51,325 bases of DNA from NCBI GenBank assembly GCA_002269645.1, contig NIVC01001618.1:1-51325 (forward strand), given 5' to 3'. Of the stretch, positions 6,501 to 38,268 are shown piece by piece. Numbering within the stretch: the first letter of the stretch is position 1; every line of letters begins with the position of its first letter. The translations under genes and the position numbers were made by a program. Source of the stretch: Macrostomum lignano (taxonomy: Eukaryota). A model generated the notes under the pieces. The model was not told the DNA's origin and searched no databases. It saw only the letters and a program-made list of their open reading frames with translations.

Positions 6501-7276
6501 CATGTTAACAACAGAAATCAATCAATCAATCAATCATTCAAGAATCTCGTTAATCAGTCGATCAATCAATCAATCGATACTAGTTAACTGCTCAATTGCC
6601 TAATCAAGGGACTCCCTTGAATAATAAATAAACTAACCTATGGCCAGATTCCTTGACAAACCTTGCACTTATCTTATTTAAAACGTTCTGAGTAAAATAC
6701 ATGCATAATAATAGGCTAAACGTAGTAAAAATATTTTATTCACCAAGCAAAATGAGTAACAAAGACTACAGATCAAAAAATTCATTGTTCTGCTAGTCAA
6801 TGAGGCACACAACTTGATACCCCCACTATAAGGTGTGGAAACCACGTAAATGAGCTGGTAGGTATTTATATTTCATTAGAAAATGTATAGAAAGCAATTA
6901 GAGCCAACAATCGAAAATCATTTTTCACTCGGCAAAAGCATAGATAGAAAGAAAAGAGAAGTAAGCATAAGCCACGCTAATAATAGATAGTATATATACG
7001 ACAAACAGACTACTAGTAGAAAGAATCATACACACAAAAACAAACATATATTTAAATGACAATTCTAGAATAAAATCTATGAATACTATATATTACGCTA
7101 CTGAAAATAAAATTGTGTACAAATCTTCAAGTAGTCACAATTTGAATAATACATTTCAGTCAAGAAACAGTGCACTGGAATGTCATCGAAGCTGTTTAAT
7201 GCTAATGTACAAAACGTACTTAATGTACTTACAGTCCGAGTCGCAAGCTCGTGTAAAACATTTCTATTCGAGCTAA

Positions 7277-13796: not shown

Positions 13797-13797
<1 letters not shown>

Positions 13798-13831
<34 letters not shown>

Positions 13832-16452: not shown

Positions 16453-19400
16453 TCAGGATGCTGCCTGAGCCTCTTCCAGCTGACGCAGCGGCGGCATGAG
16501 TACCTGGCGCAGTCTATTAATGACGGTGCGCACCAGCTGCTGCAGCGGGGCGTCCTCTTCGCAGGTGGCCGTCAGCCGTCCGGTGTCCACCTCAACCTGA
16601 CGGTTGCGCACAACCAGCTGAAAGGTCAGGCCGCTCTTCCTGGGATCCGGCCGGCCCTGCACGCTGTCCGGGCCGAACATCTCGGACAGAGTCTCCAACA
16701 GGGCGGTGCGAAACGCGGTGCTGTCTTGCCTGGCCGGGGCTGGCACGCTCTGCCAGGGCATGCCCTCCAGCTCGGCCTTCAGGATCACCGTCTGCACGGC
16801 GTCGGCGAACATGTCGCTGACCGGGTTGGACTGCCACTGAAGATGGGCAGAGTGGAGTGCTTAGCTGGGGTAGGCGCGTTCAGTGTATAGTATAATAATT
16901 GCCGTTTTCCAGCCCATAGCAACGGAGACTCTTTTTATCAATCAGTATAGAAACGAATTTTGAGAGCATAGCAACAGCGCAACAGCATAGCAACAAAGTA
17001 CGAAAGCATCCCAACAGCATAGCAACAAAGAATGGAAGCATCTCAACAGCATAGCAACAAACTACGGAAGCATCCCAACAGCATAGCAACAAAGAATGGA
17101 AGCATCTCAACAGCATAGCAACAAACTACGGAAGCATCCCAACAGCATAGCAACAAAGTACGGAAGCATCCCAACAGCATAGCAACAAAGTAAGGAAGCA
17201 TCTCAACAGCATAGCAACAAACTACGGAAGCATCTTAACAGCATAGCAACAAAGTAGGGAAGCATACCAACAGCCTAGCAACAAAGTACGGAAGCATCTT
17301 AACAGCATAGCAACAGCACAAAAACACAAAGCATTCAGACAATTAATAAGCCAATATTAACTCACCTCAATTAGAACCTGGCGCGGCTCCCAGGTAACGG
17401 TGACGCACTGGAACACGCGGTAGACGTGACAATCACCCTTCTGCCTGACAGTTTCAACTGAGCCGGCCACCACAGCCAGATGAAAGTACAATAGGCTAGG
17501 CGGCATGCTGAAATGCACAGCCATTCGCTGAGTAACCTCGCTAGTAGCCAGGTCCGTATACGTAGGCAAATCAGTCTCGTGCACCAGATGATAGCTGAAA
17601 TTCTTCTTCATCAAGATGCCGGACAGAGGCTGGCCCTCAGTAGGGGCTGATTTAGCCAAACTGCCAACCACTTTGGCAGTTTTCTCGCCGCGGAAATGCA
17701 ACGAGACGGATTCGCAGTTCTTGGGCGTGAAAATGTCCAGGCGGTAGTCGGGCTCGTCCTCGTACTGGCGCAGCAGGGCGGAGCGAAGCCGCAGCATCTC
17801 GTTCTGCTCGCCGTGCACCAGCACGATGTGCGCCGGACGCAGGTCGCGAATAAACTCAGACGTCTGCTGGTAGTCCGTGTGAGCCGAGAACGATACGTAG
17901 TCTACTGAGCACTTTAGCGGCAGCGTCTGGCCGGACATTGTGGTCACCTGTGGGTTGGTTGATTGGTTAGATCAGTGTGGAATTAGCTAGCTAGTAAATG
18001 TGGAGGCCATTCCGTTCAACATCTTGTGATACGAAGAAATTCCGTTCAATACCTCTGTGAGGAATATGGGGGGATTCCGTCCAATACCTCTGTGGGGAAT
18101 GTGGGGAGATTCCGTTCAATACCTTTGTGGGGAATGTGGGGAGATTCCGTCCAATACCTCTGTGGGGAATGTGGGGGAATTCCGTTCAATACCTCTGTGG
18201 GGAATGTGGGGAGATTCCGTCCAATACCTCTGTGGGGAATGTGGGGGGAATTCCGTTCAACACCTCTGTGGGAAATGTGGGGGAATTCTGTCCAATACCT
18301 CTGTGGGGAATGTGGGAAGATTCCGTCCAATACCTCTGTGGGGAATGTGGGGGGAATTCCGTTCAATACCTCTGTGGGGAATGTGGGAAGATTCCGTCCA
18401 ATACCTCTGTGGGGAATGTGGGGGAATTCCGTCCAATACCTCTGTGGGGAATGTGGGGGGAATTCCGTTCAATACCTCTGTGGGGAATGTGGGGGGGAAT
18501 TCCGTCCAATACCTCTGTGGGGAATGTGGGGGAATTCCGTCCAATACCTCTGTGGGGAATTCCGTTTAATACCTCTGTGGGGAATGTGGGGGGGAATTCC
18601 GTCCAATACCTCTGTGGGGAATGTGGGGGAATTCCGTCCAGTATCTCTGTGGGGAATGTGGGGGAGTTCTATCCAATATCTCTGTGGGGAATGTGGGAGA
18701 ATTCTGTTTAATATCTCTGTGGGGAATGTGGGAGAATTATGCTCAATATCTCTGGGGAATATGGGAGAAATCTGTTCAATAGCTCGGCGGGGAATGTGGG
18801 GGAATTCTGTCTAACATCTCTGTGGGGAACGTGGGGGAATTCTGTTCAGTATCTGGTCAGTTTCTATGAAATAGTTGGGAGAACGTTGCCCACCTCCTGC
18901 GGATGGCTGAGAATCTGCTTGGCCAGGGTGCCTTCAACGCAGTACCCGGCAATGATGACGCCATTGCGCTTGTCTGTGCACCAGTTCTCGAATAGTTCGC
19001 GAGACAGCCCGTTCTGCATCATGCCAGGCGAGGCCATGATAACGCACGGCCCGCTGTCAACATAGATGTCCACATTGCGCAAGTTGCTGATGTGCTTGAA
19101 CACGAATGGATTGTTATTGACAATTTTATTGCGCACAGATTCGTTCATAGCGTGAATATAAGTCTGATAGACTGCCATGCATTTCTTAGCCAGCTGGGAC
19201 GCGTAATAGATTGGGATGCGGTGCAGCTCGGGGTGCAGGCTCCAGTATTCGTCTAGGATGAGCATGAGCTCCTGGGCTCGGCCCAGAGCGAACGCCGGTA
19301 TCAGGCACCGACCGCCCCTAGCAACAATATCGTGTACTAAACCGACGAATCGGGCTTCGCGTTCCTCGCGCCTATCGTGAATGTGCGTGCCGTAGGTGGA

Positions 19401-20006
19401 CTCGGTGATGAGCACGTCTGGTCGGCAGGGCGGCAGCTCGGCGGACATCAGGTGCCGGTCCTCCTGCCGGCTGAAATCGCCCGTGTACAGGATTCGAACT
19501 CCGGCTATCTCAATTAGAAACATTGCGGCGCCGAGCACGTGACCAGCGTGATAGGCCGTGAATTTGATGCCGTTCACCTCCAGCTCTTGGTGAAAGTCGA
19601 TGGTCTCAATGCGCTCCATGGAGCTCTGGATGTCCTGATCGGCGTACAGAGCCGCCTCCGAGCTGTTGTTGCTAACCTTGACAAAGTCGCATAGCAACCA
19701 ACGGTAAATAGCCTTAGTGGCGTGGGTCATAAATACTCGGCCTCGGAATGGCGTCTTGGACAGCAGGTAGGGCAGGCCGCCGCAGTGGTCCAGGTGGAAG
19801 TGGCTCACTAGAAGTACGTCGACCTTCTCGTGCTCGATATTGTCAATGAATGGCAGGGACTCGTTGGAGCGCAGGCCCGGATGAATGCCGCAGTCCAGCA
19901 CCACCAGTTTGCCTTTGAATTTCAGCATGATGCAGGACCGGCCGACCTCTTGGCCCGAGCCCAGGGGCGTGATCACCAGCTCGTTGCTTTCATCCGCTCC
20001 GCTCAT
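16453..20006 (-). CDS. CPSF3: Cleavage and polyadenylation specificity factor 73-kDa endonuclease, 3 exons (18894-20006, 17366-17947, 16453-16836), 692 aa
   Basis: [33 protein letters not shown] (metallo-beta-lactamase), HAGHVLGA, beta-CASP, SFSAHTD and HGEQNEM. Phase-0 introns GAG|GTGGGC...CCACAG|GTG and GAG|GTGAGT...CTTCAG|TGG join the frames. Confidence 0.97.
16965..17316 (+). repeat. 32-bp minisatellite ACAGCATAGCAACAAAGTACGGAAGCATCCCA in CPSF3 intron 2
   Basis: About 11 units, partly alternating variants; lies within intron 16837-17365. Confidence 0.94.
18038..18850 (+). repeat. 35-37-bp minisatellite ATTCCGTCCAATACCTCTGTGGGGAATGTGGGGGA in CPSF3 intron 1
   Basis: About 22 units filling about 86% of intron 17948-18893. 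Confidence 0.96.
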
Positions 20007-21987
20007 GCTTGATCAGCATGCAAACATTGGGGATTTGGTGATGTAGCTATGCAGTCAATACGTTCATTGCTTGGGTATTCATTTTCTAAAGCAGATAATG
20101 ATAAGTCAGGTAGAATTTAAAATAGTGCTAAAAGACTAAAATGCTTTATTTATATTTTGATAATTGATGTAGGGTCAATTTCCCAAGAAGAAAAAATGAC
20201 AATAATTACCTGCAAAACACATGGGCAATTATGTGCTTCTTACGAGCAGATAGTTAAGATTCTTAATTAAAGTTTTTGGAAAATATGGCTTTGGGGTATA
20301 TATACTCATAAAGTATAAACATACCTTAGTATTGTATTTTACTTTTATGGAAACCAAACTGCTAAATAAATACTAGGATGCTAGTTGGTACATTTTCAAC
20401 TAAATGATTTAATTGGCACTTCAAACTGTTTTAAAGTATATTATTAGATATATAGATATATATATATATATAGAACTAAGTGAAATTACTTAAAATGTTA
20501 ATGTAGATCAATAAGAAATAGAATGGTTATAATAAATTTTTTCTATTGAGGTGGAAGGCCTCTTAGTTCAATAGATGTAATGGCAGCAAAGATTTTGTGC
20601 TGCTTTGCGAGTATATTTATATATACAAACAGCACAAGATTCAAGGGCCTAAGGAGGTATGAAAAGGTGGCATGGTGTGATAGGCTATGCCAACCCCCCC
20701 CAGCTTAGTGAGCCAGCTAGCTTGGTGTGCACCCACCCCACCTCAGCTAGACAGAGGTTGGGGCAGTTTCTAGTGCAGCTACACTGGTGCTTGCCAGTCG
20801 TGTATAGTCTGGCCACCACACTACTAAATTTATTATAAAACAAATATTTTCCCTATAACTATGGCCATAACTACAGTAAGCCTTATATTATGGCAGCTAT
20901 GATAAAATAGACCTGTATTGAAGAGAATTAAAAGAACTAAGAATACTGAGGGGCTTATATTATAGAGATAGGACAAAACAATTTTTTTAAACAATTTTAT
21001 TTATTTTGAATATCTGATGGAACCAATTTCAATACTGAATAATACTGAATATTGAAAGCACTTTGGTAAAGCCATGAATTGCAATGATTAAACTTGTGTA
21101 GAAATGTCTAGCTACACTCACTGCTAGAAGCACATGGTATTTATATCTAAACCTGATCCCTTTAGTAGCCCTTGTCCAATAGGTCTGCATCTTCTTGTCC
21201 AATGAAATATGCCTAGACCAAATGCAAACCTCATCTCTTCCAAATGTTTAGGAATCAGTGCCTCCGAATCTATGGTCCATAAACTTGATTCTTAATGTTC
21301 CACTTTTTCTAAAGCTTCAAAGCCTCCTAAAGTCTCAGTATCTAATCTGAGCACAACAGACCTCGTTATCTTATCCTTAATTCTTTCCCTTATTTATAAG
21401 CCACAACCCCATAACCCTCAACACCATTGACTCTTCAAATACAAACTTCAATCCTTAATTCTCAAATATCCTGAATTCTTCCCTTCATTTATAAGCCACA
21501 GCTGTAATACTTACTCAACTCTTGACTTGATCCAAATCTTCATCCTATATCAAAGCAACTACTCAGTATCTTATTTTTCAGCTTTTCAGCAGCTTATTTT
21601 CAACTTTCCAATTCCAATTCAAAGCAAATATTCAATCGATTTGATTCAATTCTGAACATTCAAAATATTTGTTCTATCTTTACTATGTTAAATGCATAAA
21701 GGCAAAGCTGAATAAGTTCCAAAGAAACCTTTCTATAATCATATGAGGTGTTTTTAAAACAAATGTCAGTGGCTATATATTTCTGCTCAAGCAAATGCAG
21801 CCAACCTATTTTTTAATATGTTTTATATTGTTATCTTGTGACTTACCAGCTGAAAATTCTACATTCAGCTACATTCTAGCACTAGCAGCAATGAAAGCCA
21901 ACTACTTGTTTTAAGGTGTTATATTACTGCCATGATCTGAGCTCATACTTTTGTTTATGATATGGCAAAAGTGGGGTACAGCATGCT

Positions 21988-22757
21988 CAGTGTTGTTACA
22001 AGCATTTCTGAAAAATAATCCACAGATTAAAAAAATCTGCAGAGTATATTTTTCATGAATTAGAAAGTTAAAAGATCCATTTTTAATCCTCAAAATACTT
22101 GTTCACAATATTATTAAAACCAATTTCAACAACGTCCTAATTAAGGAATCTAAATCCTAATGTATTCTGGGTCTCCTAAAGTAAAACACTAACAATATAA
22201 AATGAAGACAGTCGGAGAAAAGTCTATCGATAGCAGCCTTGAAGCTCTGCACGTAACTGTTATCCCAATGAAGCACATTTTGCAGTATCTTCAATAGCTG
22301 AGGGTCGAGCCCTCGCACCATCTCCTGCCTCGTTTGAAATTCAGTGTTGCAGAAGAACAGCCGGCAGAACTTGACTGAGCTTCTGTCACTAGGAAGAAGG
22401 CTGCCGATTCTATGGTAGATTTCCCTGTGAATGATCACACTGGGGTATCCACCAGGCATTTGCCGCTCCTCCACTCCTAATTATTTATATTCTATCAGCC
22501 AGATGGAACACTAGCTAATACAAGTCTGTCAGTTTAGCTATATTAAAAAACTAAGTGATATAACAAAAAATAAATGAAAATAGAAAACACAAAAAGACAG
22601 GAACCATACTTGTAAATGTAAAACATTGTTTTTATATACAGTTTTGCAAAAAAAGAAAAATCCGCAGAAATTCAAAAACAAATAAAATAATCAGCATTTT
22701 CCTCAGAAAGCTAAAAAATCTGCAGTGTGGAAATTTCTGCAGCTTGTAACACCACTG
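21988..22757. mobile_element. Non-autonomous hAT-like element, 770 bp
   Basis: 16-bp TIRs CAGTGTTGTTACAAGC / GCTTGTAACACCACTG (1 mismatch) with perfect 8-bp TSD AGCATGCT (21980-21987 and 22758-22765). Removing it restores the mariner frame ...MAKVGYS|MLKIKEAL. Confidence 0.82.
22157..22474 (-). pseudogene. Helitron Rep/helicase N-terminal fragment inside the hAT-like element
   Basis: IHREIYHRIGSLLP...FCRLFFCNTEFQTRQEMVRGLDPQLLKILQNVLHWDNSYVQSFKAA matches the Helitron pattern IQGQVYHRIGSLLP...FAQLY.YD...LD..IL..LQ.ML...NPYV..FK.A. Confidence 0.72.
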
Positions 22758-24059
22758 AGCATGCTGAAAATCAAAGAGGCCTTGGCCATGGCCCACCTAG
22801 ACAAGCAGCTATCCAAGAGGCAAATCTATTGTCTCATCTGTCAAGAAAATGATGGCCAGGACACAGAAGATTAATGCAGGTTCAATGCAAAGAAAACAAG
22901 ACAATTTGCAGACTACCATAGCTATAGAAGAGGCTATTGAGTCTGATCACTACAAAACCATTGAGGAATTAGCCAAAGACTTTGACCTGTCTATCAGCAT
23001 AGTCCACACAATTTTACACATGGATCTTGGATTGTCTAAGAAGAGTGTGCTGGGTCTCTTGGCTGCTATTGCTGGAGCAGAAAGCAGAGCAAGTCTGCTG
23101 CTATAAGATTATGCAAAAGCTCCACTTTGAGCAAAGTGGAGCCTTTGAGACATCCATGATGACCAGTCTTTTTTCACCTTAGAGACCAAGCAGCAAAGCC
23201 ACCAATGGCTGTTAAGAAGAGTTCCAGTACCAACTACCAATGAATGTGAGAGTCCAGGAGTCCTACAAGAAGCAGATAATCTTTATCTTCTTTGACTCCC
23301 AAGGCATGATCTATATGCACTATGACCCAATAAGCTCAAAAATTAATTCCAACTACTAAGGTATATCTTGAATATGTTGGCCACTTTCAAGAAGCAACTA
23401 GCTTAGAAATGGTCATAGTTGGCCAAAGGCCAATGGTTCTTCCATTGGGACAATGCAACAGTCTACTCAGTGGCCAAGATAAGAGTTTTTAGCTAAAAAT
23501 CATATCAAAGTACTTAAGTATCCATTATATTTACCAGATCTAGTTTTAGCCAACTTTTGACTATTTTTCAAGTGAAATTGGACTTATTAAGTAGCTAGAT
23601 TGTTGGCAAAACAGTAAGAGCAGAGTGGGAACACATTGTAAGGAGTCTCCTAACAGTTGTATATGCCTAAGCTTTTTATAACTAGATGGAGCAATGCAAG
23701 AAGTGCATCAAGCTAGGTGGTAACTATGTTGCAAAGTTGTAGGGAATAATAGACCAAAGTTGCCATGCGAGCTAGAAAATAAACTCACAAAAATTTGTTT
23801 TTGAAAACACATATATATATTATATAACAATAAATTGATTATTATAAGACATAGTTATATCATTAATGCTAGATTATTATTCCATATCTATAGTAATAGT
23901 ATCATTAACTGATCATAGTATTTATATCTAATTAATTTGGTTTATATAATTTTAACAATATACTATTATAGAACATGAATTAATATATTAAGTGATTAAC
24001 CTATTTTTATATACTAAATATTAGTAGCTAAAATAATTGGTCAAAGATGCTAAAAATAT

Positions 24060-25230
24060 ATAGAGGCCTATTCAAAAAGCCTAAAAATTTGAGCAAAAAC
24101 TGAAGATATACCTTTATATCATTTATATACAAAGGGCATGCAATGTATTCTGCACAAATGCCTATTATGATAAAACAGTGAAGGGCACAGTCATACTACA
24201 TATGTCATAACTCAACATAGTCTCTATCTAATGCAATGCACTTTTGCCATTGTCACTCCAGCTTCTTGATCCCCTCCTCAAAACAGGTTTGTGGAAGCTA
24301 CAAAATTGACTTTCTTCATAGTAGCCCAAATCTCCTCTACTATGAAGTGGATATCATGCAAGGGATCTTTGAGCTATACAAACAGGTGGTAGTTGCTGGG
24401 GGCTAGGTGTGGGAGTAGCTGCCACTTCAGTTGTCGAATTTTGGCCATAGACAAACATGTTATGTGCACTTGTGCATTGTCCTAAAGGAGGAGCGAATGA
24501 CCATGGATCTTTCCAAGTCTGACTTTGGGCAGTTTCTGATAGACTTCTTCTAGCAAAGTGCTATAACAGGTAGCAGTGATACTTGTCTTTAGAGAATAGA
24601 AGTCAGTATGGATGATTCCCTTATAGTTGCAAAATATAGTGAGTTGAAACTTGCCAATAGAGAGGGACCTGACTTGGCATGAACTAGTCAAGATTCATCA
24701 GGACCCACCCACTGCATCCATTGGCACTTGGTCTTAGGTAGGAAGTATAGCAAAGGGGTTTTATCAAAGGTTATGATGCATTGCCAGAAATGGTCACCTA
24801 TGTCTTCTAACATATTGATATACATAGTCACATAGGCCACCCTTCTTCCTTTCTACTTAGCCATTAGTAGCCTTGGGACCAATAGAGAGTTAAGCTTCTT
24901 TATCTGCAAATCCCCATGGACAATCTTCTCCAAAGAGCCACAAGAGATACCTATGGATTACCTCCATTTCATCAAATGTGAGCCATTGGTCTTTGTCTAC
25001 GAGGGTCTATACACAGTCTATATTCTGTTTTATTGCTACAGTCAATAGACCTTTATTGCATACATCATCTTTGAGGTCATGTTGCCTAGCAGCAAAGTAG
25101 GCAATCCACTTACTCACTATGGATCTGTTAGGAGCTAAGTCACTATAATGTGCTTATAGGCATTTGGCAGCCTTATTCAGTGTTAATCCTTCTTTATATC
25201 AGAAATAGGTGATTGCCTTCCATTTATTTT
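24060..25230 (-). mobile_element. Second decayed mariner (different family); boundaries approximate
   Basis: Minus-strand remnants YKEGLTLNKAA...APNRSIVSKWI, TIFCNYKGIIHTDF...LL*DNAQVH, LAPSNYHLF and WQKCIALDRDYVEL*. Confidence 0.8.
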
Positions 25231-25799
25231 AGTAGGTGCATAGCTAGGATTTATATCAAGGAGGGACAGAAACATAAATTCATCTCTAATATTAGCAATA
25301 GAAGCAAAAAAACGAAATCAATAAAAAAATTTTTCCCCTTCTAGAGGGGGGGGACATGTCCTTAGTGTCCCCCCTCCCCATTGGCTATGCCCCTGATTTT
25401 TTAATGAATTTGAGTATTTGGAAAAGGAAAATAGATGCATCATTTATTATCTAGATAATTAAGGACTATTAATGTGAGTTGAATGAAAAATTCAATATTA
25501 TTAGATAATACAATGTACTGTCTGGACCATATATAGAAATAAGTACTTCTCTGTTTTAATTCAAGTAGGAACCCCTTGGCCTAGTACAAAATACATTATA
25601 TATCCTTCAACCATTGCAAGTCATACCTGTCATATGCCTAAAAATTTATAAAACTGTTATATTTTCATACATAATCTTTTTATCATGCTCAGTAAAGTAG
25701 ATGTAGACCTATATAAATAAGTATTAATTTATTAAAAATTAGTAAATAATAATAATAATTTTATAGTCTAGGCCTATACACTCAGTTGTTTTAAGCATT

Positions 25800-25967
25800 C
25801 ATGCACAACTTTGGGAATCACCTAGCCATTTCAATTGGCAACACATACATGTAAGTTGCTATTGGCTAAGAGCAGTCACGTGACTACTATTCCGTCCAAT
25901 AGCAACTTACATGTGTTTGTTGCAAATAGAAATAGCTGAGTGAATCCCAAAGTTGCGCCCAAGCATG
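25800..25967. mobile_element. Palindromic MITE-like element, copy A
   Basis: Long imperfect hairpin bounded by CATG...GTTGCGCCCAAGCATG; clearly homologous to 35419-35563. Confidence 0.75.
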
Positions 25968-26079
25968 GTTTTAAGCATTTATTAGGTTAGAATAGAAGGC
26001 TAATATAGGTTGTATTTATAAAAAAGCATAGCTTAGGCCCTAGGGCCTAGTAAATAATTTGTATATTCTTTATTTGGCA

Positions 26080-26465
26080 ATCTTTTGGTTTCCCACTCTA
26101 AATTATTTTAATGCTTTTTTCAAACTTTTCAGAGTTGCAGAAGCATAGAAGCAGAAGCATACGTTCAGGTAAAGTTCAGGTAAGTTGCTGAAGTGACATA
26201 GCAATGTCACAGGTCTCGCAATTCCTGCTATTGGTAAACGGGTGGTGTCTCGCCATCCAATGCATTGCCTCGTCAACATTGGGCACCAATGCAACTAGTC
26301 CTCAATGATTAACATCAATGTCATACAGAACTATGCTTTTGAGGACTTCGGCGGCTGGGACAATGGTCTGCGGCGCAGGAGGTCGACCAGCCATACTAGC
26401 AGTAGCTGAAAAGTTTGAAAAAAGCGTTAAAATAACTTAGAGTGGGAAAACGAAAGATCACCCTT
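26080..26465. mobile_element. MITE-like element with about 55-bp imperfect TIRs
   Basis: TTTCCCACTCTAAAATTATTTTAATGCTTTTTTCAAACTTTTCAG on the left is the reverse complement (few mismatches) of CTGAAAAGTTTGAAAAAAGCGTTAAAATAACTTAGAGTGGGAAA on the right. Confidence 0.65.
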
Positions 26466-28070
26466 TATTCTATTCTAGGAACTCTCATTCTATTCTTATT
26501 TGTCTCCCAGGGGGCGGGGGGCACTGATGGCTAGTAAGATAATTGTAGACTGGATGTTGTATCAGATTGACTGAGGCCGATGGGTTTGATTGAGACTTCT
26601 TATTAAATTTAAGTTTTTTCTTAAATTTAATAAGAAATTAAGAATTTAATAAAATTATTTAAAATCATAAAAAATTATTAGAAAGAGACGAGAGAATAAA
26701 CGGATAAGCTAATAATGCAGATTAATTGTAGATAGACCTGGTTGTTCATTATCAGGTAAAGTTAGAAAAGCAACACTGGACCAAAGTGGTCAAAACAAGG
26801 CAAGCTGGCAAGCTATGAGTTAGACTTCGCGGATCAGTGTCTTAACTTAACTTTCAACTAAAATTTCTTAGAAGAAGACACTTTAAAAGTTGTGTTAACA
26901 TGATTAAACAAATTATTTCTGATATTTGCATACTGTTCAATCCAGAAAATGCTAAGTGAAATATTACCTAATAGTGATTAAAGTTCTGCTTTTTTCAGAC
27001 GTTGTGTTCTATCAAAACTAATAATCACTTTTTTAGCCGATGGAGGAGGAGAATCGCACTCACTGTATTGTTATTTTGTTATTCAGTAAGTTACCAAATA
27101 GCGCTCTAAAAGTTTAACTTCGGTTAGTAAAATTGGAACAAAAATGAATTCGCTTGTGCAAACCAATGCTTATTCTCTACTGAAAGCATGTAGAATCATG
27201 CCTTTAGCTTCACGTACAAAGTGAGTCTGCATTTTGCTTAGGGGCCTAGGCCCTTATCTTATATCTTAGGCCTTCAATGGGCTGGTTAGGCCTGTGCCTA
27301 ACGGATGACATGGCCATTTGTATTTGTAGCTATTACATTTTTTAATTTTATTATTTACTGCGAGAGTCAAAAAATCTCTATACTATAGCATTGCCATGCC
27401 ATTTACTAGGCATTCTAATGAGATTTTGAAAATTTGGAATTTAGTCTTTTTTTCTTCTTTATATGATAGATAATGCCTGTATGAGCATTTTGACACCTCC
27501 CATATAAAATTTGGTCAAATAATAAAAAAGTTGTGACACATTTTGTGTCAAAAATTTTGTCTAGGTTCGTAATGCATTTTTCCCATAAGGGACTGTGATC
27601 ATTTTGGTATCAAAAAGAGCATTTTTTTATTTAAACATCTATAACTTTTTTTTTAGTTGGTCAATTTTTATGCACAATTTGTCATTTTTTTGCAAATTTT
27701 TCAGGCTTTTAGAACATGCTATTGTCTATATTATACAGTACCTTTGTTATATTTTATGACATTCTTTTTCAGGGATCATTTACAAAAATTGTGAATTTTG
27801 CGGATAAAAAAATTTGACCAGTCATAACTTTTCTGTATTTTGCCCACATTTAGTGTCCAATATGTCATTCTTTCTTATATTTCCAGAAGGACATATTAAT
27901 ACATGTTTGGCATATTATGTTTTTACTTCATAATCAGTAGACTCTGTTTAGTATGTAGTAATTTAGTAGTATGCAAACTCAAAACTGATCAGTTTATAAT
28001 GCTGCTGTGACCTTTTTCTTCTTCCAGCTACTGACTGAGCTAGCCTGCTAGCCTACCTAAGCTTTGCTTC

Positions 28071-28420
28071 TTGAGTTTGACCTTGTCTCTTCTTGCCATG
28101 AGCACCTCCCAGGCCACCAAGTCTGGTACAGATGTGGCAACCCAGCCTCCTGATACTGACACACACCAGGCATCAGTGAAGGAGGTGCTGGAAGTCTTTG
28201 CTGGTGGTGGCATGCATGGCCAGCGGGCTGTGCGTGCCCATATCGGAGCTGCCCTTCTGGCTAATGTCACTGAGCTGCATCTGTTCAATAGGCTGCAAAA
28301 GCTCAGGGCAAAGGCCACGAAGCTCTCAAAGCTGAAGACCGCGAGTCGCCAGAGGGACTTCAACGAGTTCTTGTCCAGCCCCTTTGTCATTCAAGGTTGT
28401 GCCCGCGGTGCTCTGCCTGT
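28071..28420 (+). pseudogene. GC-rich coding-like remnant, probably transposon-derived
   Basis: Open frame ...VRAHIGAALLANVTELHLFNRLQKLRAKATKLSKLKTASRQRDFNEFLSSPF in an otherwise AT-rich block; family not recognised. Confidence 0.3.
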
Positions 28421-29599
28421 GACTCCATCATCGTGCAGTATTGAACTGCCTAAATGTATGCACATATATAGTACATGTACATGCCATTGTATAAAAATGG
28501 ACTTCCGACTCCCTTACAGAACACTAAAGAGTCAAAGTTACAGCTTATATACTGCTATATCCATGATTAAATGTCTCAGTATCTATGTCTCAGACACACA
28601 GACAATGAAGACATAGTCCGGAGCACCAGATTGACTGCCGATGAATAGCCTGAAAATGCAAAGCATGGGGGTGGGTAATTTTGAAGTGAGCGCGCTTGAA
28701 CGCGCGTCGATGAATTTCTCTACTTTTTTTTACATTGTTTTCTTCCGGAATTGTTGCGCATTTTTAAGGGGGTGACGTCGCGGGGAGAAGGCTTATTTCT
28801 TATAGAAAAATTAGTTAAAAGTTTTTTTTTTCGTTTTTAAGCAACAAAAAATGTATGAAAACTTTTTTATTCCTTCTAGAAACAATATTTAACTCCGTAT
28901 CTTTGTTAATAAAAAAGAATTTATATGATACCTATAACAGCTTTCTCATAATTTCAAATTGAATTTACCGTCCATTTTTCACGATACGGCTTCATTTTTT
29001 CATATTTGCCAAATTTTGACCTCTTTTTAATGGACTATAACTTTTGTATTATACACGGTACACGCAAGTGGTTGGTGTCATTTTAAAGATAAACTCTTCT
29101 TCTTTCGATTGCATACTCATTCTTTCTATAACTCCGTTTATTTGATATAGTTTTTTATGTTCAAAGTTAGGGTACTTTTTGCCACTTTTCCAGTTTTTCA
29201 ATGGTCACGTGACCCTCACTGGAGTCCCTACATTTACTCACATTGCCATTTAAAGTGTTGAATTTATTATTCATAATAAAAATAGGCCTAGTAACATTTC
29301 ACAATTTTATAGAGTTCCACTGTAGCTAAAGACATGGTCATGGGAAGTTATAGATAGCCTATAGAGGTTTTTGGCAAAGCATATGAATATAGATAGGATA
29401 GGCTTAGGTTATAAGACATAGTCATACATTTTGGTATCTAGTCAATCTAGGTATCAAGCAACAGGACAATCTAATTGATGATAGACAATTCAATGATAGT
29501 CAAAATGCCAACAATCAATTTGGCAATAAAGTGTAATAAAAAGCTATTACAATATATGTAAATTGGCTAGGCCTATTGTCATTTAAACAGATTAGAAAG

Positions 29600-30540
29600 C
29601 TTAAATAATATATAATATTTAGGCAATTGCTAAGTTCTATTTGTTAAATTATTTTGACTCTAGAAAAGTACTGTACAACCTATTTTAAGTACAAATAGCT
29701 ATTTTTAAGAGACAAGCATTAGTTTCATGCTTCAAAACTTGTTATAATATATCTGACATCAAAAAGCCGCAATAGATTAGTCTATGGCCAAAACATTAAT
29801 ATGTGAAATAGAAAAAAAAATATTATTGTTTATAGTCAAACTGCCAATTAACAGCAAAATTTTTATATATTACAGTATTGAGAAATCTATAATAGGATAT
29901 GCCCAAATGGTTTTACACCTTTTCACGTTCAATTTTGAACAAAGTCCAGTTCTAAAAAAACTAGCAGAAATTCAATTCAGACAATTCAGACTGGGGCAAC
30001 AAACCCCAGTTCAAAACATTCTGCTACGGAAGCGAGGTTTAGCCATAGACAAAATTGTCCCCAGTCTGAATTGTCTGAATTGAATTTCCGCTAGTTTTTT
30101 TAGAACTGGATTTTGTTCAAAATTGAACGTGAAAAGGTGTATTAGGTTCAGTTAATGCTATAATTCCTCTAAGTAATTTTAAATAGGGCTTGTGAAGTCC
30201 CATGCATGGTGCATAGCATGGCGCACAGCCTTGCTAAATTTAGGACTTTACTTTTATTTATTTGTTATTTGTCAATTTGTTAAAGATCATTGATATTTAG
30301 ACTTGACCATAGACCTTTTTCAAGGCAAAGAATGTTCAAACATTCTGGCCATAGACTTTTGCGGCTTTCCGATGTCAGGTATATTATAACAAGTTTTGAA
30401 GCATAGAATTAGTGCCTAGTCAGGCTTAAGTCTCCTAAAAGTATTTATTTATACTTGAAATAGTTTATACATTACTTTTCTAGAATCAAAATAATTTTTA
30501 TGAATGGAACTTGACAGTTGCCAATATCTATAATATATAA
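29600..30540. repeat. Long inverted-repeat (foldback-like) element, arms about 29600-29800 and 30335-30540
   Basis: For example ATGCTTCAAAACTTGTTATAATATATCTGACATC is mirrored by GATGTCAGGTATATTATAACAAGTTTTGAAGCAT. Confidence 0.7.
29916..30139. mobile_element. 224-bp hairpin MITE with TA target duplication (Tc1/mariner-like)
   Basis: TA|CACCTTTTCACGTTCAATTTTGAAC...GTTCAAAATTGAACGTGAAAAGGTG|TA; about 80-bp near-perfect arms. Confidence 0.85.
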
Positions 30541-30698
30541 TAATATTACAATTATTATTGCTAATATTTTTTTATTATAGGCAAAAAAGTTTGATATGAT
30601 GCCCTAAATTGTATCAAAAGTATATCTATAATATAATACAATAGATATTGATTCCTAATATTAAGGTTTCCTTATAGATATTTAAACAGATATTTAAA

Positions 30699-32183
30699 AT
30701 GATCATCTATAACTTTTAACAAAATTGACCTTCTTCAACTATCTTTTCATCAAATATTTAAGCAATTGTTGGATATTAAATAAGCATTCATTTATTTACT
30801 AAAGTAACCATATTTTTAAAATACATTAATTCAAAGATTGTTTAGCAACACTCTGATTAGGACATTATTTTACCATTGATTAAAATTGTTTTGATCATAG
30901 CAGCCTAAAGATAGTTAAAAATTATTTAACTTTTTACATGTGTCTCAACTTTTTCAGCTACTGCCTTGATGCTAAGATATTCAATACTAAACATTGCTTT
31001 GCACAAACTTACATTAGAAATTTTACTTATTTTTAATCAATATTTGTTTAGCTGCTATATCCTTGTTTTTTATCAGAATCTTGTCAAATTCTAGTCATAG
31101 CTATAAGATGTGTCAAAAAAGTTCCAAGACTAAAGTCCTACAGCACAACTTTTAGGTGCACTATCAATTTGCAGTTTGTTGAAGGCTGATACACCTCATA
31201 TATATCTACTATAAAGTAAAGAGTAAGCCTTGACATCTCAGAAATTGAGTAGGACTTTGCAGGGTAGTCTATAGACATAGCAAGAGGCAAATGTTGCCTA
31301 TTCCTTTAGCTCTTAAAAGCCCAGCAGGGTTGTGACAGGCAGATAGGCAAAAGCAAGGTGGTCAGGATGGTTCACTAGCTATGGCTCATTTTGCAATGTG
31401 GTCTTCCATAGGGGGGAAAGTGGCTCATCTTGTTGCCTAGATAAACTGAGTGATGTTGTTGGGTTGGCAAACCTCATCAATAGATGGGTTCAGCTTGAGT
31501 TAGCATATCTAGTCTTTGGTAAAGGAAGGGTAAAGAAAGGGCAATGGCAGACAATGCTGCTAAGCATCTTAATTATAATTAATAAAAGGGCTAATTATAA
31601 TTAAAAGTTTGTTTTCAAGTTTGCCTTAGAGGAAATAGTGCCTATCAAGGTAGCCATGGCCAAAAAGGTCATGATAAAGGTATGAATATCTTTCTGTTTT
31701 GGTTTGGAAGGATATTCCTGAGCCTGCAAAAGCTGACATTTCATTTTAAAGCTAACATTGTGTATTGACATGACTAGAATTTGACAAGATTCTGATGAAA
31801 AACAAGGACACAGCAGCTGAACAAAAATCAGTAAAATTTCCAAATATGAGTTTGCATAAAGCAATGTTTAGTTTTAAATATCTCAGCATCAGTGTAGTCT
31901 TTTGTGGTGGCTGAGATGTCATTTTAAAGCTGATATAGATATAAAAAGTTAATCAAAGCATTTTTTTAAACTAGCTTTTAAGCTGCTACAATTGAAACAA
32001 ATTTAGTCAAAGGTAAAGCGATGTCTAATCAGAGTGTTGATAAGCAATTTTTGAATTAATGTATCTCAAAGATTTTTACTAAAGTAAATAAATTAAAGCT
32101 TATTCGATGCCCAACAATTGATTAGATGTTTGCTAAAAAGATGATTGAAGCAGGTCATTTTGTTAAAAGTTACAGACAATCAT
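30699..32183. repeat. Foldback-like element with about 400-bp diverged inverted arms (30699-31098 and 31770-32183)
   Basis: ATCAGAATCTTGTCAAATTCTAGTCAT is mirrored by ATGACTAGAATTTGACAAGATTCTGAT; TAACTTTTAACAAAATTGACC by GGTCATTTTGTTAAAAGTTA. Confidence 0.75.
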
Positions 32184-32799
32184 GCCTGACATTGATTCTT
32201 ACATTTCCCTCACATTGATTCCTATTATCTAATTCCTATATCTATTAATACTAATACCACTCAACTGAGATTTAAAAGGTCAATTGAGCTATTGATTTGA
32301 TGGGGTAGGATAGTAAAAATGATGAATGTTGCCAGTTTCAAATTGGAGGGAACTCTTAAGTCCCTAGAATTTAAGACTTGTATGAGCTTATATGTATCAA
32401 TATAGATTTTTAATGCCCTAGTCCCTATAGTTAAAGACTAGGAATACCAGTCATTTTGATAAGACATATTGGTGATGGACACTGGCAACAAGACATATAG
32501 ATTGCTATATATTATTTTTATAACTCATTGATTAATTAACAATCAACTAATCAGTATGCATGTCAAAGTCTAGAAAATCTTAGGCCTACTATAAATTCCA
32601 GTATGCTCAATGAATTTGAACTTGTTATTCAGGCCAGCATACAGGCTAGCATAACTTCAAGCCAAAGTTAAGTAGACTTGCTATTATAGCTATTATAGAT
32701 AAAATAAATATCAAGTCATTTATAAATAAATTTGGTATTCTAATGAGAAACTAAAGTGAATGAGAAAGGCACTCTTCCAAATGAAAAAAGTCATGAGCT

Positions 32800-35700
32800 A
32801 TGCTTGTTCAAACTTTGGCCGCCAGGGCTCACTGGGCCAGCGTGGAGATGGGCCCACCGGACCCGATCCTGGGCGTTACCGAGGCGTTCAAGCGGGACAA
32901 GAATCCCAAGAAGATGAACCTCGGCGTTGGCGCCTACAGAGACGACACTGGCAAGCCATTTGTGCTGCCTTCGGTGCGCAAAGCTGAGGAGCAGCTGATG
33001 GCCCAGAAACTGGACAAGGTGAAACAGACAGCTTTTTATCTTATAAAATTTCCCACGAAATTGTAGCAATCTGTAAATAACTCCTGCCTAGTGGTGGGTC
33101 TGGAGCTGCTCCAGCTGTGATCATTTTAGCTGCTGAATTGGGCTGATGAGTCGCTCATTTGAATAAGCCGCATTTTTGCTCTGCCAAACCTCTGTTGACG
33201 CCGCAGACTGCGTTCAAAATCGTCCTTCAAATTTAGAACTGATCTTTGAGAATCGAGTCTTGAAAATGTCGCTTATCGAGAATCGCCTACTTTAGAACTA
33301 ACCATAAAGATTCAACCACTGAGAATCACTCATCGAGAATCTTTAATGAAGAATCTCACACGATGAGAATCACTCATCGGGAATCATTAATGAAGAATCA
33401 CACACTAAAAATCACTCGTCAAATCATTAATGAAGAATCACCCACTGATAATCACTCTTCAAGAATCATTCATGAAGAATCACCCACTGATAATCACTCA
33501 TTGAGAATCAATGATGAAGAATCACCCACTGATAATCACTCATTGAGAATCAATGATGAAGAATCACCCACTGAGAATCACTCATCGAGAATCATTAATG
33601 AAGAATCACTCATCGAGAATCATTAATGAAGAATCACTCATCGAGAATCATTAATAAAGAATCACTCATCGAGAATCAGTAATGAACAATCAATCACTGA
33701 GAATAATTATTGAAAAATCACCCACCTAGAATCGTTAATGAAGAATCACACACTAAAAATCACCCATCGAGAATCATTATTGAAGAATCACTCATCGAGA
33801 ATCAGTAATGAACAATCAATCACTGAGAATAATTATTGAAAAATCACCCACCTAGAATCGTTAATGAAGAATCACACACTAAAAATCACCCATCGAGAAT
33901 CATTATTGAAGAATCACTCACTAAGTATCACTCACCGAAAACCATTAATGAAGAATCAGTCACCGAGAATCATTAATGAAGAATTACTCACTGAGAATCA
34001 TTAAGGAAGAATTACTCACTGAGAATCATTAAAGAAGAATTACTCACTGAGAATCATTAAGGAAGAATTACTCACTGAGAATCACTCGAGAATCATCCAT
34101 GACATACGAGGGTCACTCAGAAAGTTCTTAGCCTGAACACGAAAACAGCAACAAATGAACTAAAAAACGACTACAAGTGCTCAAAATACTCTCCACCGGC
34201 ATTGATACAGGCTTGCATCCTGTGAAACCAGCTGTCGAAGCAATGCCGCCAATCCTCATCCCGGAGCTCCTCGATGATGTTTTTGAACTCATTTACAGCT
34301 TCTTCCGGTGAAGAAAAAACCTGGCCCTTCAGAATCTCCTTGCACTTCGGAAACAGAAAAAAGTCGCACGGTGCCAGGTCTGGACTGTAAGCAGGGTGAG
34401 TCATCAGCTGGACCCCACAGTCAGCCAGAAACTCCAGAGTTTGAGCCGCCGTGTGCGCGCTGGCGTTGTCGTGGTGCAGAAGCACCCCGCGCAATCCGCA
34501 CCTTGGGCGCCTCTGGCTCACAGCAGAAAAGACCTTGGGCAGGCAAACCGTTGTGTACCAGTCAGCGGTGACTGTCTGGCGATCTTCAAGTGAAACGGAA
34601 GCCACATGCCCAGTGCGCATGAAGAAACAGGCCACCATCTGCTTGCCGACACTCCGGCTGCGTCGAAACTTTGTGGGGCTGTCCTCGTCTCCAAAGGTCC
34701 ACATGGCTGACTGGCGCTTGCTTTCGGGGTCGTATTGATAAATCCAGGTCTCATCGCCCGTGAGGATGTCCCAGATACGCCGGCTGGTCCCGGATTCGAA
34801 TTTCTGCAGCATGAATCGGCACCAAGCCACCCTGGTGTCCTTCTGCACGTCCGACAGCTGATGGGGGATCCACCGGGAAGCCAGCTTCCGCACTCCAAGG
34901 TGTTCGTGCATAATGGCGTGCACACTCCCCGATCCAATACCGATCTCCTGCTGGATCTGCTGGTAGGTCACTCGCCGGTCAGCGGCAATCATGCTGGACA
35001 CAGCGCAGATATTTTCTGGAGTCACTGCGTCACAGGGTCTCCCGGATCGATGTTCATCTTCGAGGCTTTCTCGACCTCGGCGAAACTCAGCGAACCAGTT
35101 TTTGACGGTTGCGTATGAAGGACATACATGGGTGAAAACGTTCTGTAAAGTTTGATACGATTCGGCCGGCGACTTGCCTTGCTTGAAGTGCAGGTACATC
35201 ATTGCTCTGAAGTCGCGATTTTCCAGCTTCATTGTTGAATTGAAGAACTCAGGGGGTGAACTGACTTTAACTCGCTGCAGTGGACTCAAAAGTGGCTGCT
35301 TCTGTTTGAAATTTTTGCTGCGATACTTTTAAAAGTTGGTCTTTACCATAGACAAATTTCATGCTTCTACGTCTCGTGGATCCTACTCAGGCTAAAGACT
35401 TTCTGAGTGACCCTCGTACATGCGCAACCTTGGGAATCGTTCGGCCGTTTCTATTGGCAACACACACACAGTCACGTGGCTACACTTCCATCCAATAGCG
35501 ACTTAAATGTGTGTGTTGCCAATAGAAATGGCCGGATGAATCCCTAGGTTGCGCCCAAGCATGATCCATGAGAAGTCGCCCATTGCGAAAAGCCTACCGA
35601 TAATTCACTATCAATTTTTAGCGTTGACTGTCGCTCTTTGGAAATCACCCCTTGAAAATTGCCCCATTACGAGTGGCCTCCAACGCCAACCTAATGCAGG

Positions 35701-37480: not shown

Positions 37481-38268
37481 ATCGCCTCTGACTGTTTGTG
37501 TTGTTTCATGGATTCTAGTAGGGGTCTAGTAGGGGTCTTATTACTTATAGTAGTAATATATATATACGGGTACGTATTAATTGTTTACTTTCTGTGTAGC
37601 AGTTACCATGGAGATGGCGAGGTCCAGCGTTAAATGAAATACTTTGCTGCGCTGTTTTCAAACTCAAATTTGCAAGAAGAGAAACAACAGGGCGTCTTGC
37701 TACTACTTTTATAGTTGAATATTACTATTAGTAGTGCGCAACAGCTGGAAATGATTATTTCGATAGACTTCCTTCGATTTGCGTAAAATCACGCTTGGTT
37801 AAAAATTTCAATAATAATAATATCAATTTTTCTCTGGTTTAGCTTTAAGGTTGCTGTGAACTTTTTTAGCGCCTCGAATGACAGGATTAGTTTGACATTG
37901 ACGCTGTTTCGAATAGTTGGTTAATTTATATTGTATTTTTAGTTAATTTTTTGTCTAAGCGTGTTTTTGTTGTGTCTAAAATTTCAACCGAGAAAAACAC
38001 TCATTAGAACTGATGACAGCCCGTCTTAGCACACAGCTTATTAGTTGTTAACTAATATAGATGCTTTAAATTCTATCGAACTTGTTTTTTGTATTCCTTG
38101 TTACACTTTTTTGCTAAATAAAAACCTAAATTTCGAATAGCTAATACCCGCTAGATATTCGATGATAGCACACCAAATTTTAGTTTGCACATTCAGGTCC
38201 TACAAAAATACGGTTTTTCAAGCCTTGATAATCATTAATAAATATCATAGATAATTCCTGTCAAATTA

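What the first reader, a model, noticed from the sequence alone, without database searches (positions are those of the whole stretch)
20100..32780. A 12.6-kb transposon block with RIP-like, near-saturating C-to-T / G-to-A decay and sharp borders at genes
Seen: by manual scan, 22766-23767 (1 kb of former mariner transposase, roughly 40% GC) contains no CpG, and most of the block between the CPSF3 start and the first GOT2 exon is similarly depleted. The flanking exons, the mariner at 34.1 kb and the Gypsy at 47.7 kb are CpG-rich. Both decayed mariners, the MITEs and the foldback arms show the same directional change on both strands. Established: 5mC deamination erodes CpG; Neurospora-type RIP converts C to T in repeats, favouring CpA, and is not an established animal mechanism. 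Inference: this block is or was a domain of targeted cytosine methylation/deamination that inactivated its transposons.
Basis: partly seen in the sequence, partly recalled or inferred. Interest (0 to 1): 0.8.

Follow-up and report, generated by a model that had tools for sequence, protein, structure and literature searches.

The report
CpG-decayed transposon spacer between two genes
A 12.8-kb stretch of old transposon debris between (and inside the first intron of) two housekeeping genes of an unidentified invertebrate has lost almost all its CpG sites, which is the ordinary footprint of locally targeted DNA methylation and not a fungal-style RIP process.

Summary
Window 20100-32780 holds 100 CpGs against 373 expected (o/e 0.27). 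It includes CpG-free runs of 1105 bp and 1649 bp. All other non-tandem noncoding DNA in the window has o/e 0.69-1.11, and exons and intact transposons have 0.84-1.02.

The decay is CpG-specific, not RIP-like:
- The RIP substrate index has a median of 1.45, where RIP needs below about 1.
- TpA is not enriched.
- CpA and CpT cytosines decay equally.
- Transversions roughly equal transitions against an intact family member.
- Indels and frameshifts are present.

CpG loss is near-saturating: 65 of 67 CpG positions of an intact relative are gone, mostly to TG, CA or TA. CpG is not hypermutable in the neighbouring GOT2 exons when compared with a related species' mRNA (odds ratio 1.1). The hypermutability is therefore local.

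The gene map also needs correcting. GOT2 exon 1 lies inside the block at 27144-27220. The block is therefore the CPSF3-GOT2 divergent spacer plus GOT2 intron 1. It is a mosaic: old elements are CpG-free, while young TIR elements and the GOT2 promoter keep CpG.

Best reading: germline CpG methylation aimed at transposon-rich spacer DNA in a genome with unmethylated gene bodies. This is a known kind of system.

The parts
16492..20006 (-). CPSF3 (CPSF73) gene. Three exons at 20006-18876, 17950-17312 and 16842-16492. CpG o/e 0.86-0.99. Forms the left border of the block.
   Evidence: Pfam Lactamase_B, Beta-Casp. tblastn of 120 homologues. Composition.
20007..21978 (.). CPSF3-proximal upstream DNA. 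Deeply CpG-depleted (7 CpGs against 55 expected, o/e 0.13). No recognisable transposon protein.
21979..22766 (.). 788-bp element bounded by 25-nt TIRs that are 96% complementary. Younger, with CpG o/e 0.44.
   Evidence: the repeat finder I12..
22767..23767 (+). Decayed mariner copy 2. 0 CpGs against 40 expected, GC 0.40. Only 25-30% aa identity to available transposases.
   Evidence: tblastn..
24211..25228 (-). Decayed mariner copy 1. 3 CpGs against 43 expected. About 9 in-frame stops and 3 frameshifts. Same family as the intact P0122/L002.
25795..25970 (.). Palindromic MITE related to the copy at 35405-35570. The block copy keeps 3 CpGs, and the outside copy has about 9.
26080..26458 (.). 379-bp TIR element (53-nt arms, 92% complementary). 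CpG o/e 0.70.
26459..27220 (+). GOT2 upstream region and exon 1 (27144-27220, mitochondrial presequence). CpG o/e 0.63-0.71, so CpG is retained inside the block.
   Evidence: Related-species mRNA L003..
27221..32825 (+). GOT2 intron 1 (GT...AG), 5.6 kb. CpG o/e 0.33 overall.
27521..28871 (.). 1351-bp TIR-bounded element (28-nt arms, 86% complementary) carrying a GC-rich ORF at 28098-28616 with no Pfam match. CpG o/e 0.54.
29605..30541 (.). Small foldback (arms 75% identical) enclosing a young hairpin at 29914-30141 (arms 98% identical, o/e 0.65).
30699..32183 (.). Large foldback with arms of about 400 nt at 75% identity. 2 CpGs against 38 expected (o/e 0.05). Arm differences: 46 transitions, 22 transversions, 44 gapped columns.
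32826..37480 (+). GOT2 exons 2-4 (32826-33018, 35700-36155, 36929-37480). CpG o/e 0.70-1.02. Forms the right border of the block.

Best explanation
The block is the AT-rich spacer between the divergently transcribed CPSF3 and GOT2 genes, together with GOT2's 5.6-kb first intron. It has been filled by nested DNA-transposon insertions of different ages: two mariners of different families, TIR elements or MITEs, and foldbacks.

In the germline, cytosines in CpG within this transposon-rich DNA are or were methylated. Spontaneous 5mC deamination then converted CpG to TpG/CpA on both strands until the old elements held almost no CpG. Younger insertions and the GOT2 promoter still keep part of theirs. 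The rest of the change is ordinary AT-biased neutral decay towards the genome's roughly 33% GC noncoding composition: the GC fall from about 0.52 to about 0.40, the stop codons, the transversions, the indels and the frameshifts. Gene bodies in this genome are unmethylated.

Shown: the CpG-specific, local, age-graded loss and its products. Inferred: that 5mC is the cause, and that it is aimed at transposons or heterochromatin.
For: - Local depletion. The block has o/e 0.27, against 0.84 for outside noncoding DNA and about 1.0 for exons.
- Products of CpG decay. Of 67 CpG positions in the intact family member L002 (GC 0.52, o/e 0.95), 2 remain CpG in mariner 1. Sixteen are TG, 13 are CA and 8 are TA.
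- Arg codons. Eleven of 21 conserved Arg codons became Gln, Cys, His or stop through CGN to CAN/TGN changes, and one more (Arg to Trp) may have.
- Independent decay in repeat arms. CA aligned to TG occurs 5 times in repeat arms, against 0 for the GpC control AC:GT.
- Context. In repeat arms the C/T difference fraction is 19/30 at CpG-type sites against 55/209 elsewhere (OR 4.8, p=1e-4). CpA at 0.30 does not differ from CpT at 0.25.
- Control for genome-wide hypermutability. Between the window's GOT2 CDS and a related species' mRNA (85.6% nt identity), CpG-type sites differ no more often than other C sites: 30/212 against 60/470 (OR 1.13), and 22/90 against 52/232 at third positions.
- Age gradient. 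Elements with arms 92-98% identical keep o/e 0.44-0.70, and elements with arms 75% identical keep 0.05.
- Replicate in another animal genome. A mariner of the same family in L001 has o/e 0.34, exactly bounded by 10-kb flanks at 0.92-0.93.
- Precedent. Transposon-only CpG methylation with unmethylated gene bodies is documented in a chaetognath, early-branching nematodes and ctenophores (PMC12460157). CpG o/e is an accepted proxy for germline methylation (PMC8857923).
Against: - No methylation data and no DNMT genes are available for this unidentified organism.
- Depletion also covers about 44% of the block that is not demonstrably transposon. This includes the 2 kb next to the CPSF3 start codon, which is an odd place for heavy methylation if the CPSF3 promoter lies there.
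- No old transposon outside such a block exists in the window, so position and element age cannot be fully separated.
- Minisatellite arrays outside the block show a modest CpG transition excess (OR 1.8).
- The comparison with L002 mixes pre-insertion family divergence with post-insertion decay.
Confidence: 0.7

Rival explanations
1. Ordinary ageing without targeting. All neutral DNA in this genome slowly loses CpG, and the block is simply the oldest neutral DNA in the window. CpG-replete sequence elsewhere is young (minisatellites, fresh transposons) or selected (exons).
For: CpG retention within the block tracks element age. The ages of the outside noncoding segments are unknown. Minisatellites outside show a weak CpG transition excess (OR 1.8). 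No old transposon lies outside the block for comparison.
Against: CpG sites are not hypermutable in GOT2 exons, including synonymous third positions, over about 14% divergence from a related species (OR 1.1). AT-rich noncoding DNA outside keeps o/e 0.73-1.11. The GOT2 promoter inside the block keeps 0.63-0.71. In L001 the depletion stops at the element ends. An o/e of 0-0.1 implies roughly 10-fold or greater hypermutability (inference).
Confidence: 0.13
2. A RIP-like or deaminase-driven hypermutation (Neurospora-type RIP, basidiomycete TCG-type, or AID/APOBEC editing) hit the repeats and converted C to T broadly.
For: GC-to-AT transitions outnumber AT-to-GC transitions 45:5 at conserved codons of mariner 1 and 150:57 against L002. 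Both strands are affected. About 21 of 45 inferred transitions now sit in TpA.
Against: - The RIP composite index is above 0 in 1 of 49 windows, and the substrate index has a median of 1.45 and never falls below 1.02.
- TpA o/e is 0.90, the same as AT-rich DNA outside.
- CpA equals CpT in decay.
- Transitions/transversions are about 1.0-2.1, and indels and frameshifts are present.
- Half of the C/G sites are intact.
- The two mariners are different families, so they are not a duplicated RIP substrate.
- The strand-symmetric pattern argues against single-strand APOBEC editing.
- The directional bias is expected for a 52% GC element relaxing towards a 33% GC background.
Confidence: 0.04
3. The CpG loss is a relic. 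The lineage methylated this DNA in the past but no longer does, or a CpG-specific process other than 5mC acts here (for example selection against CpG in silenced chromatin).
For: Sequence alone records history, not the present state. Many invertebrate lineages have lost DNMTs.
Against: Differences between the arms of the youngest elements (92-98% identical) are still enriched at CpG sites, with 3 of 5 transitions there. This argues for recent activity. No known selective force removes CpG from noncoding transposon debris to below 10% of expectation.
Confidence: 0.1

Closest known systems
Transposon-restricted CpG methylation with unmethylated gene bodies in animals (chaetognath Paraspadella gotoi, early-branching nematodes, ctenophores; PMC12460157)
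   Same: Gene bodies are free of the methylation footprint: exon CpG o/e is about 1 and CpG is not hypermutable there. Transposon DNA carries the footprint. Low-complexity tandem repeats appear unaffected.
   Different: Here the evidence is only the mutational footprint, with no methylome and no DNMT inventory. The organism is unidentified (GOT2 is 74% identical to gastropods and 73% to a brachiopod). The depletion also covers DNA not recognisable as transposon.
Vertebrate-type CpG decay with CpG-island-like protected promoters
   Same: Depletion is as strong as or stronger than in vertebrate bulk DNA (o/e 0-0.17). CpG is converted to TG/CA. CpG is retained around the GOT2 promoter and exon 1.
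   Different: The depletion is not genome-wide, since exons and other noncoding DNA are CpG-replete. The region next to the CPSF3 start codon is not protected.
Fungal RIP and RIP-generated AT-rich isochores (Neurospora crassa, Leptosphaeria maculans; from general knowledge)
   Same: An AT-rich block of inactivated transposons with sharp borders against GC-rich genes, and a directional GC-to-AT shift on both strands.
   Different: There is no CpA preference, the RIP indices are negative, transversions and indels are abundant, C/G sites are not saturated, and the host is an animal. The AT-richness equals the genome's ordinary noncoding composition.
CpG o/e surveys of repeat methylation in invertebrates (e.g. 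Cnidaria, PMC8857923)
   Same: The same inference from CpG depletion and TpG enrichment of repeats to historical germline methylation.
   Different: Those genomes methylate gene bodies more than repeats. This locus shows the reverse.

Membership tests
Neurospora-type RIP | Mutations almost exclusively C:G to T:A transitions, with few transversions or indels | tested here: not met
   Foldback arms show 46 transitions, 22 transversions and 44 gapped columns. Mariner 1 against intact L002 shows 207 transitions and 199 transversions, with 3 frameshifts.
Neurospora-type RIP | CpA preference: CpA/TpG depleted and TpA enriched, so TpA/ApT is high and (CpA+TpG)/(ApC+GpT) is below about 1.03 | tested here: not met
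   The median substrate index is 1.45, with a minimum of 1.02. The composite index is above 0 in 1 of 49 windows. CpA decays at 0.30 against 0.25 for CpT, not significant.
Neurospora-type RIP | Acts on duplicated sequence within one genome | tested here: inconclusive
   The two mariners are different families with no DNA similarity beyond 35 nt. Foldback arms are duplicated, but non-repeated spacers are equally CpG-poor. Genome-wide copy number is unknown.
Neurospora-type RIP | RID/Dim-2-type cytosine methyltransferase homologue in the genome | not testable with these tools
   Only a 51-kb window is available, and the organism was not identified.
5mC-deamination CpG decay (germline CpG methylation footprint) | CpG strongly under-represented while GpC is not | tested here: met
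   In the block, CpG o/e is 0.27 and GpC o/e is 1.45. Old elements have CpG o/e 0-0.17.
5mC-deamination CpG decay (germline CpG methylation footprint) | Lost CpGs appear as TpG/CpA, on both strands | tested here: met
   Of 67 CpG positions in L002, 16 are TG, 13 are CA, 8 are TA and 2 are kept. Arg CGN codons became CAN/TGN 11 times. CA:TG aligned pairs number 5, against 0 for the control.
5mC-deamination CpG decay (germline CpG methylation footprint) | Hypermutability confined to the CpG context | tested here: met
   CpG-type sites 19/30 against non-CpG 55/209, OR 4.8, p=1e-4. Against L002, C-to-T per context is CpG about 33%, CpA 16-24%, CpT 16% and CpC 9%.
5mC-deamination CpG decay (germline CpG methylation footprint) | Direct presence of 5mC and of DNMT1/DNMT3 | not testable with these tools
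   No methylome or proteome of the source organism is available.
Transposon-targeted (not gene-body, not global) methylation | Gene bodies lack the footprint | tested here: met
   Exon CpG o/e is 0.70-1.02. CpG-type and non-CpG substitution between species are equal, OR 1.13 overall and 1.12 at third positions. The related species' CDS has o/e 1.03.
Transposon-targeted (not gene-body, not global) methylation | The footprint coincides with transposon boundaries | tested here: inconclusive
   In L001 the depletion is exactly element-bounded. In the window it also covers about 44% unannotated DNA, which may be unrecognised debris or the result of spreading.

The most novel reading that the evidence does not exclude
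On top of CpG decay, the block may have experienced an extra, targeted cytosine deamination in non-CpG contexts. GC-to-AT transitions outnumber AT-to-GC transitions about 9:1 at conserved codons of mariner 1, and 5.6:1 at codon positions 1 and 2 against an intact relative. That would be an animal process functionally analogous to RIP but without the CpA preference. The window contains no equally old neutral sequence outside the block, so the ordinary AT-biased baseline could not be measured.
Probability: 0.06. Interest if true: 0.75.

Novelty: new member of a known kind. Interest (0 to 1): 0.3.

Why it matters
If confirmed by a methylome, this locus would place another invertebrate lineage among the few animals that aim CpG methylation at transposon-rich DNA while leaving gene bodies unmethylated. 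Here the mutational strength would match vertebrates. That bears on how often methylation has been retargeted between genes and transposons in animal evolution.

It does not provide evidence for RIP in animals. Practically, the work corrects the local gene model (GOT2 exon 1 and a 5.6-kb first intron). It also shows that the 'sharp borders at genes' are boundaries between coding and noncoding sequence.

Tried and rejected
I reached the family through P0121 instead.
- My first single-frame translation of mariner 1 was wrong in its middle third. The copy has 3 frameshifts, which is why one search found only one hit.
- Mariner 2 could not be polarised. The best homologues are only 25-30% identical.
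- The exact-protein look-up of the intact mariner found nothing on record.
- The organism could not be identified. The best CPSF3 hits are a flat 73-77% across bilaterians. GOT2 has one 93% hit in unnamed RNA-seq runs and otherwise 74% or less. The run accessions appear in no paper. A chaetognath origin was considered but has no support.
- A six-frame Pfam scan of 20007-22780 found no domain. Rfam and tRNA scans of the window found nothing.
- A naive fixed-period slicing of minisatellites lost register. It was replaced by alignment to an ideal array, which has low power because there are only 22 CpG columns and the cells are not independent.
- The old minisatellite in GOT2 intron 2 (33317-34102, o/e 0.74) was considered as an age-matched control. 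I rejected it as unreliable because it is a higher-order repeat of three 14-bp subunit types.
- The TpA-creating transitions first looked RIP-like. With proper denominators CpA is not preferred over CpT.
Full report
**What the window is.**
The window comes from an animal genome.
- ORF 18864-20006 (minus strand) is the N-terminal metallo-beta-lactamase/Beta-CASP part of CPSF3. It is 73-77% identical to CPSF3 across bilaterians. tblastn of 120 homologues gives three exons: 20006-18876, 17950-17312 and 16842-16492.
- An intact Mos1-type mariner transposase lies at 34171-35289 on the minus strand.
- A Gypsy element has RT, RNase H and integrase ORFs at 47754-51073.
- Outside the block the window is packed with minisatellite arrays. 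The block has none.

- One-kb bins from 20001 to 33000 have GC 0.28-0.43 and CpG o/e 0.00-0.63. GpC o/e is 1.2-1.7.
- CpG-free runs span 22663-23768 (1105 bp, 43 expected) and 30370-32019 (1649 bp, 39 expected).
- Over 20100-32780 there are 100 CpGs against 373 expected (o/e 0.27).
- Fifteen non-tandem noncoding segments outside pool to 465 against 551 (o/e 0.84), Poisson p about 2e-45.
- Outside segments as AT-rich as the block have normal CpG: 37481-38265 (GC 0.33, o/e 1.11), 12708-13908 (GC 0.35, o/e 0.73) and 6502-7288 (GC 0.32, o/e 0.83).
- AT-richness and high GpC are therefore the genome's ordinary noncoding composition. CpG loss is what is special about the block.
- Exons (0.70-1.02), the intact mariner (0.84) and the Gypsy (0.94) are CpG-replete.

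**Correction of the gene map.**
A GOT2 search found a 93% identical protein in two RNA-seq assemblies of a related, unnamed species. The next best hits are gastropods and a brachiopod at 72-74%.

These bases encode the presequence MNSLVQ.... They lie at 27144-27220, inside the block.

A complete model with canonical GT-AG introns is: exon 1 at 27144-27220, exon 2 at 32826-33018, exon 3 at 35700-36155, exon 4 at 36929-37480. It encodes 425 aa, 91.5% identical in protein and 85.6% in DNA to the relative.

The block is therefore two things:
- the 7.1-kb spacer between the divergently oriented CPSF3 and GOT2 start codons;
- GOT2 exon 1 and its 5.6-kb first intron.

Both 'sharp borders' are boundaries between coding and noncoding sequence.

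**The block is a mosaic.**

Deeply depleted segments (o/e 0-0.17):

| Segment | What it is | CpG o/e |
|---|---|---|
| 20007-21978 | next to the CPSF3 start | 0.13 |
| 22767-23767 | mariner 2 | 0.00 |
| 24211-25228 | mariner 1 | 0.07 |
| spacers between elements | unannotated | 0-0.17 |
| 30699-32183 | large foldback | 0.05 |
| 32184-32821 | end of GOT2 intron 1 | 0.06 |

Intermediate segments (o/e 0.4-0.7):

| Segment | What it is | CpG o/e |
|---|---|---|
| 21979-22766 | TIR element, TIRs 96% | 0.44 |
| 26080-26458 | TIR element, arms 92% | 0.70 |
| 27521-28871 | TIR element, arms 86% | 0.54 |
| 29914-30141 | hairpin, arms 98% | 0.65 |
| 26459-27220 | GOT2 upstream region and exon 1 | 0.63-0.71 |

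- CpG content thus falls with element age, and the GOT2 promoter region is spared.
- About 56% of the block is demonstrably transposon-derived.
- A six-frame Pfam scan of 20007-22780 found nothing.

**Polarising the decay of mariner 1.**
One database protein (P0121) matched the decayed copy. A profile-free search with P0121 recovered its family.

That family includes an intact 352-aa transposase, P0122. Its DNA (L002) has GC 0.52 and CpG o/e 0.95, and 24 of its 29 Arg codons are CGN.

P0122 aligns to 25228-24211 in four pieces in alternating frames. The copy therefore has three frameshifts as well as in-frame stops.

At 254 positions where close homologues agree, 127 residues differ from the consensus. 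Of these, 89 are explained by a single base change:
- C-to-T plus G-to-A: 45
- T-to-C plus A-to-G: 5
- transversions: 39

Fates of the 21 conserved Arg positions:
- Eleven became Gln (CAA, 5), Cys (TGC/TGT, 4), His (CAC, 1) or stop (TGA, 1). These are the changes expected from CGN codons losing their CpG.
- One more became Trp (TGG), which can arise the same way.

The codon-aligned comparison with L002 covers 1005 nt at 59.6% identity:
- C-to-T 72 against T-to-C 25
- G-to-A 78 against A-to-G 32
- 199 transversions against 207 transitions

Of 67 CpG positions in L002, 2 are still CpG. Sixteen are TG, 13 are CA and 8 are TA. For non-CpG cytosines the C-to-T fraction is 16% before A, 16% before T and 9% before C. 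CpG loss is near-saturating. General C-to-T change is not, because about half of the C/G positions are unchanged.

**Repeat arms inside the block give the same picture.**
- The large foldback arms differ by 46 transitions, 22 transversions and 44 gapped columns.
- CA aligned with TG is the signature of one ancestral CpG decaying independently in both arms. It occurs 5 times, against 0 for the GpC control AC:GT.
- The fraction of C-bearing sites that differ is 19/30 at CpG-type sites and 55/209 elsewhere (OR 4.8, p=1e-4).
- CpA (0.30) does not differ from CpT (0.25).
- Even the youngest elements show 3 of their 5 arm transitions at CpG sites.
- The block MITE keeps 3 CpGs where its relative in GOT2 intron 2 has about 9.

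**RIP is not supported.**
- In 49 windows of 500 bp the composite RIP index exceeds 0 once (maximum 0.07).
- The median TpA/ApT is 0.94.
- The median (CpA+TpG)/(ApC+GpT) is 1.45 and never falls below 1.02.
- TpA o/e in the block (0.90) equals that of AT-rich DNA outside (0.91-0.96).
- An early hint that many inferred transitions now sit in TpA disappeared once proper denominators were used.

**Is the CpG hypermutability local or genome-wide?**
The best control is the GOT2 coding sequence compared with the related species.
- CpG-type sites differ in 30/212 cases and other C sites in 60/470 (OR 1.13, p=0.63).
- At third codon positions the counts are 22/90 against 52/232 (OR 1.12).
- Forward and reverse transitions are balanced there.
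- CpG is therefore not intrinsically hypermutable in this lineage, and gene bodies have not been methylated in the germline.
- Minisatellites outside the block show only a weak excess (23/407 against 77/2393, OR 1.8, cells not independent).

A mariner of the same family in an unrelated animal contig (L001) gives an independent replicate.
- The element has CpG o/e 0.34.
- Its two 10-kb flanks have 0.92-0.93 at GC 0.33-0.35.
- The depletion is exactly bounded by the element.

**Mechanism.**
- The simplest account is germline CpG methylation directed at transposon-rich or silenced DNA. It is followed by 5mC deamination, on top of ordinary AT-biased neutral decay.
- An o/e of 0-0.1 implies roughly ten-fold or greater CpG hypermutability in old parts of the block (inference).
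- Transposon-only methylation with unmethylated gene bodies is documented in a chaetognath, early-branching nematodes and ctenophores (PMC12460157).
- CpG o/e is an accepted proxy for historical germline methylation (PMC8857923).
- Methylation itself is not shown, nor is its present-day activity.
- It is also open whether the target is each element or the whole domain.
- One oddity remains. The 300 bp next to the CPSF3 start codon hold only 2 CpGs, so either the CPSF3 promoter tolerates this state or its start site lies elsewhere.

**Verdict.**
The 'targeted methylation/deamination domain' reading is supported in its CpG form. The 'RIP-like, near-saturating C-to-T' reading is rejected. This is a new example of a known kind of system, of moderate interest.

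Noticed in passing
window 27144-27220 and 27221-32825: GOT2 has an upstream exon 1 (mitochondrial presequence) inside the block, followed by a 5.6-kb first intron. The ATG at 32800 taken as the gene start is intronic, and the true exon 2 starts at 32826.
   Followed up: yes
window 18038-18842, 16980-17315, 36207-36917, 33317-34102: The introns of the otherwise intron-poor CPSF3 (3 exons) and GOT2 (4 exons) consist almost entirely of minisatellite arrays with 22-42-bp units. More than 25 arrays fill much of the window outside the block, and the block has none.
   Followed up: partly
window 20007-20306 versus 26459-27143: The DNA immediately upstream of the CPSF3 start codon is CpG-depleted (2 CpGs in 300 bp), while the GOT2 upstream region retains CpG (o/e 0.63). 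CPSF3 may use a distal or shared bidirectional promoter. This was not tested.
   Followed up: no
L001 9700-10920 (ENA ERZ25067582, contig ctg11442): In another, unidentified animal genome a mariner of the same family has CpG o/e 0.34. Its 10-kb flanks on both sides have 0.92-0.93 at the same GC, so the CpG depletion is bounded by the element.
   Followed up: partly
window 34171-35289 (-) and 35405-35570: An apparently intact Mos1-type mariner ORF (372 codons, no stops) sits in GOT2 intron 2. Next to it is a palindromic MITE related to the block MITE at 25795-25970.
   Followed up: partly
window 27521-28871, ORF 28098-28616 (+): A TIR-bounded 1.35-kb element carries a GC-rich ORF beginning MSTSQATKSG... 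It has no Pfam match and its nature is unknown.
   Followed up: no
window 42205-42798 (-): This ORF contains a WAP four-disulfide-core domain (Pfam E=3e-7). It is embedded between minisatellite arrays and may be an exon of a small secreted-protein gene.
   Followed up: no
window 47754-51073 (+): A Gypsy-type element has open RT (719 codons), RNase H and integrase ORFs and CpG o/e 0.94. It looks young or active.
   Followed up: partly
window AT-rich noncoding DNA and L001: GpC o/e is unusually high (1.3-1.7) in AT-rich noncoding DNA, both in the window and in the unrelated contig L001. This is independent of CpG status and unexplained.
   Followed up: no
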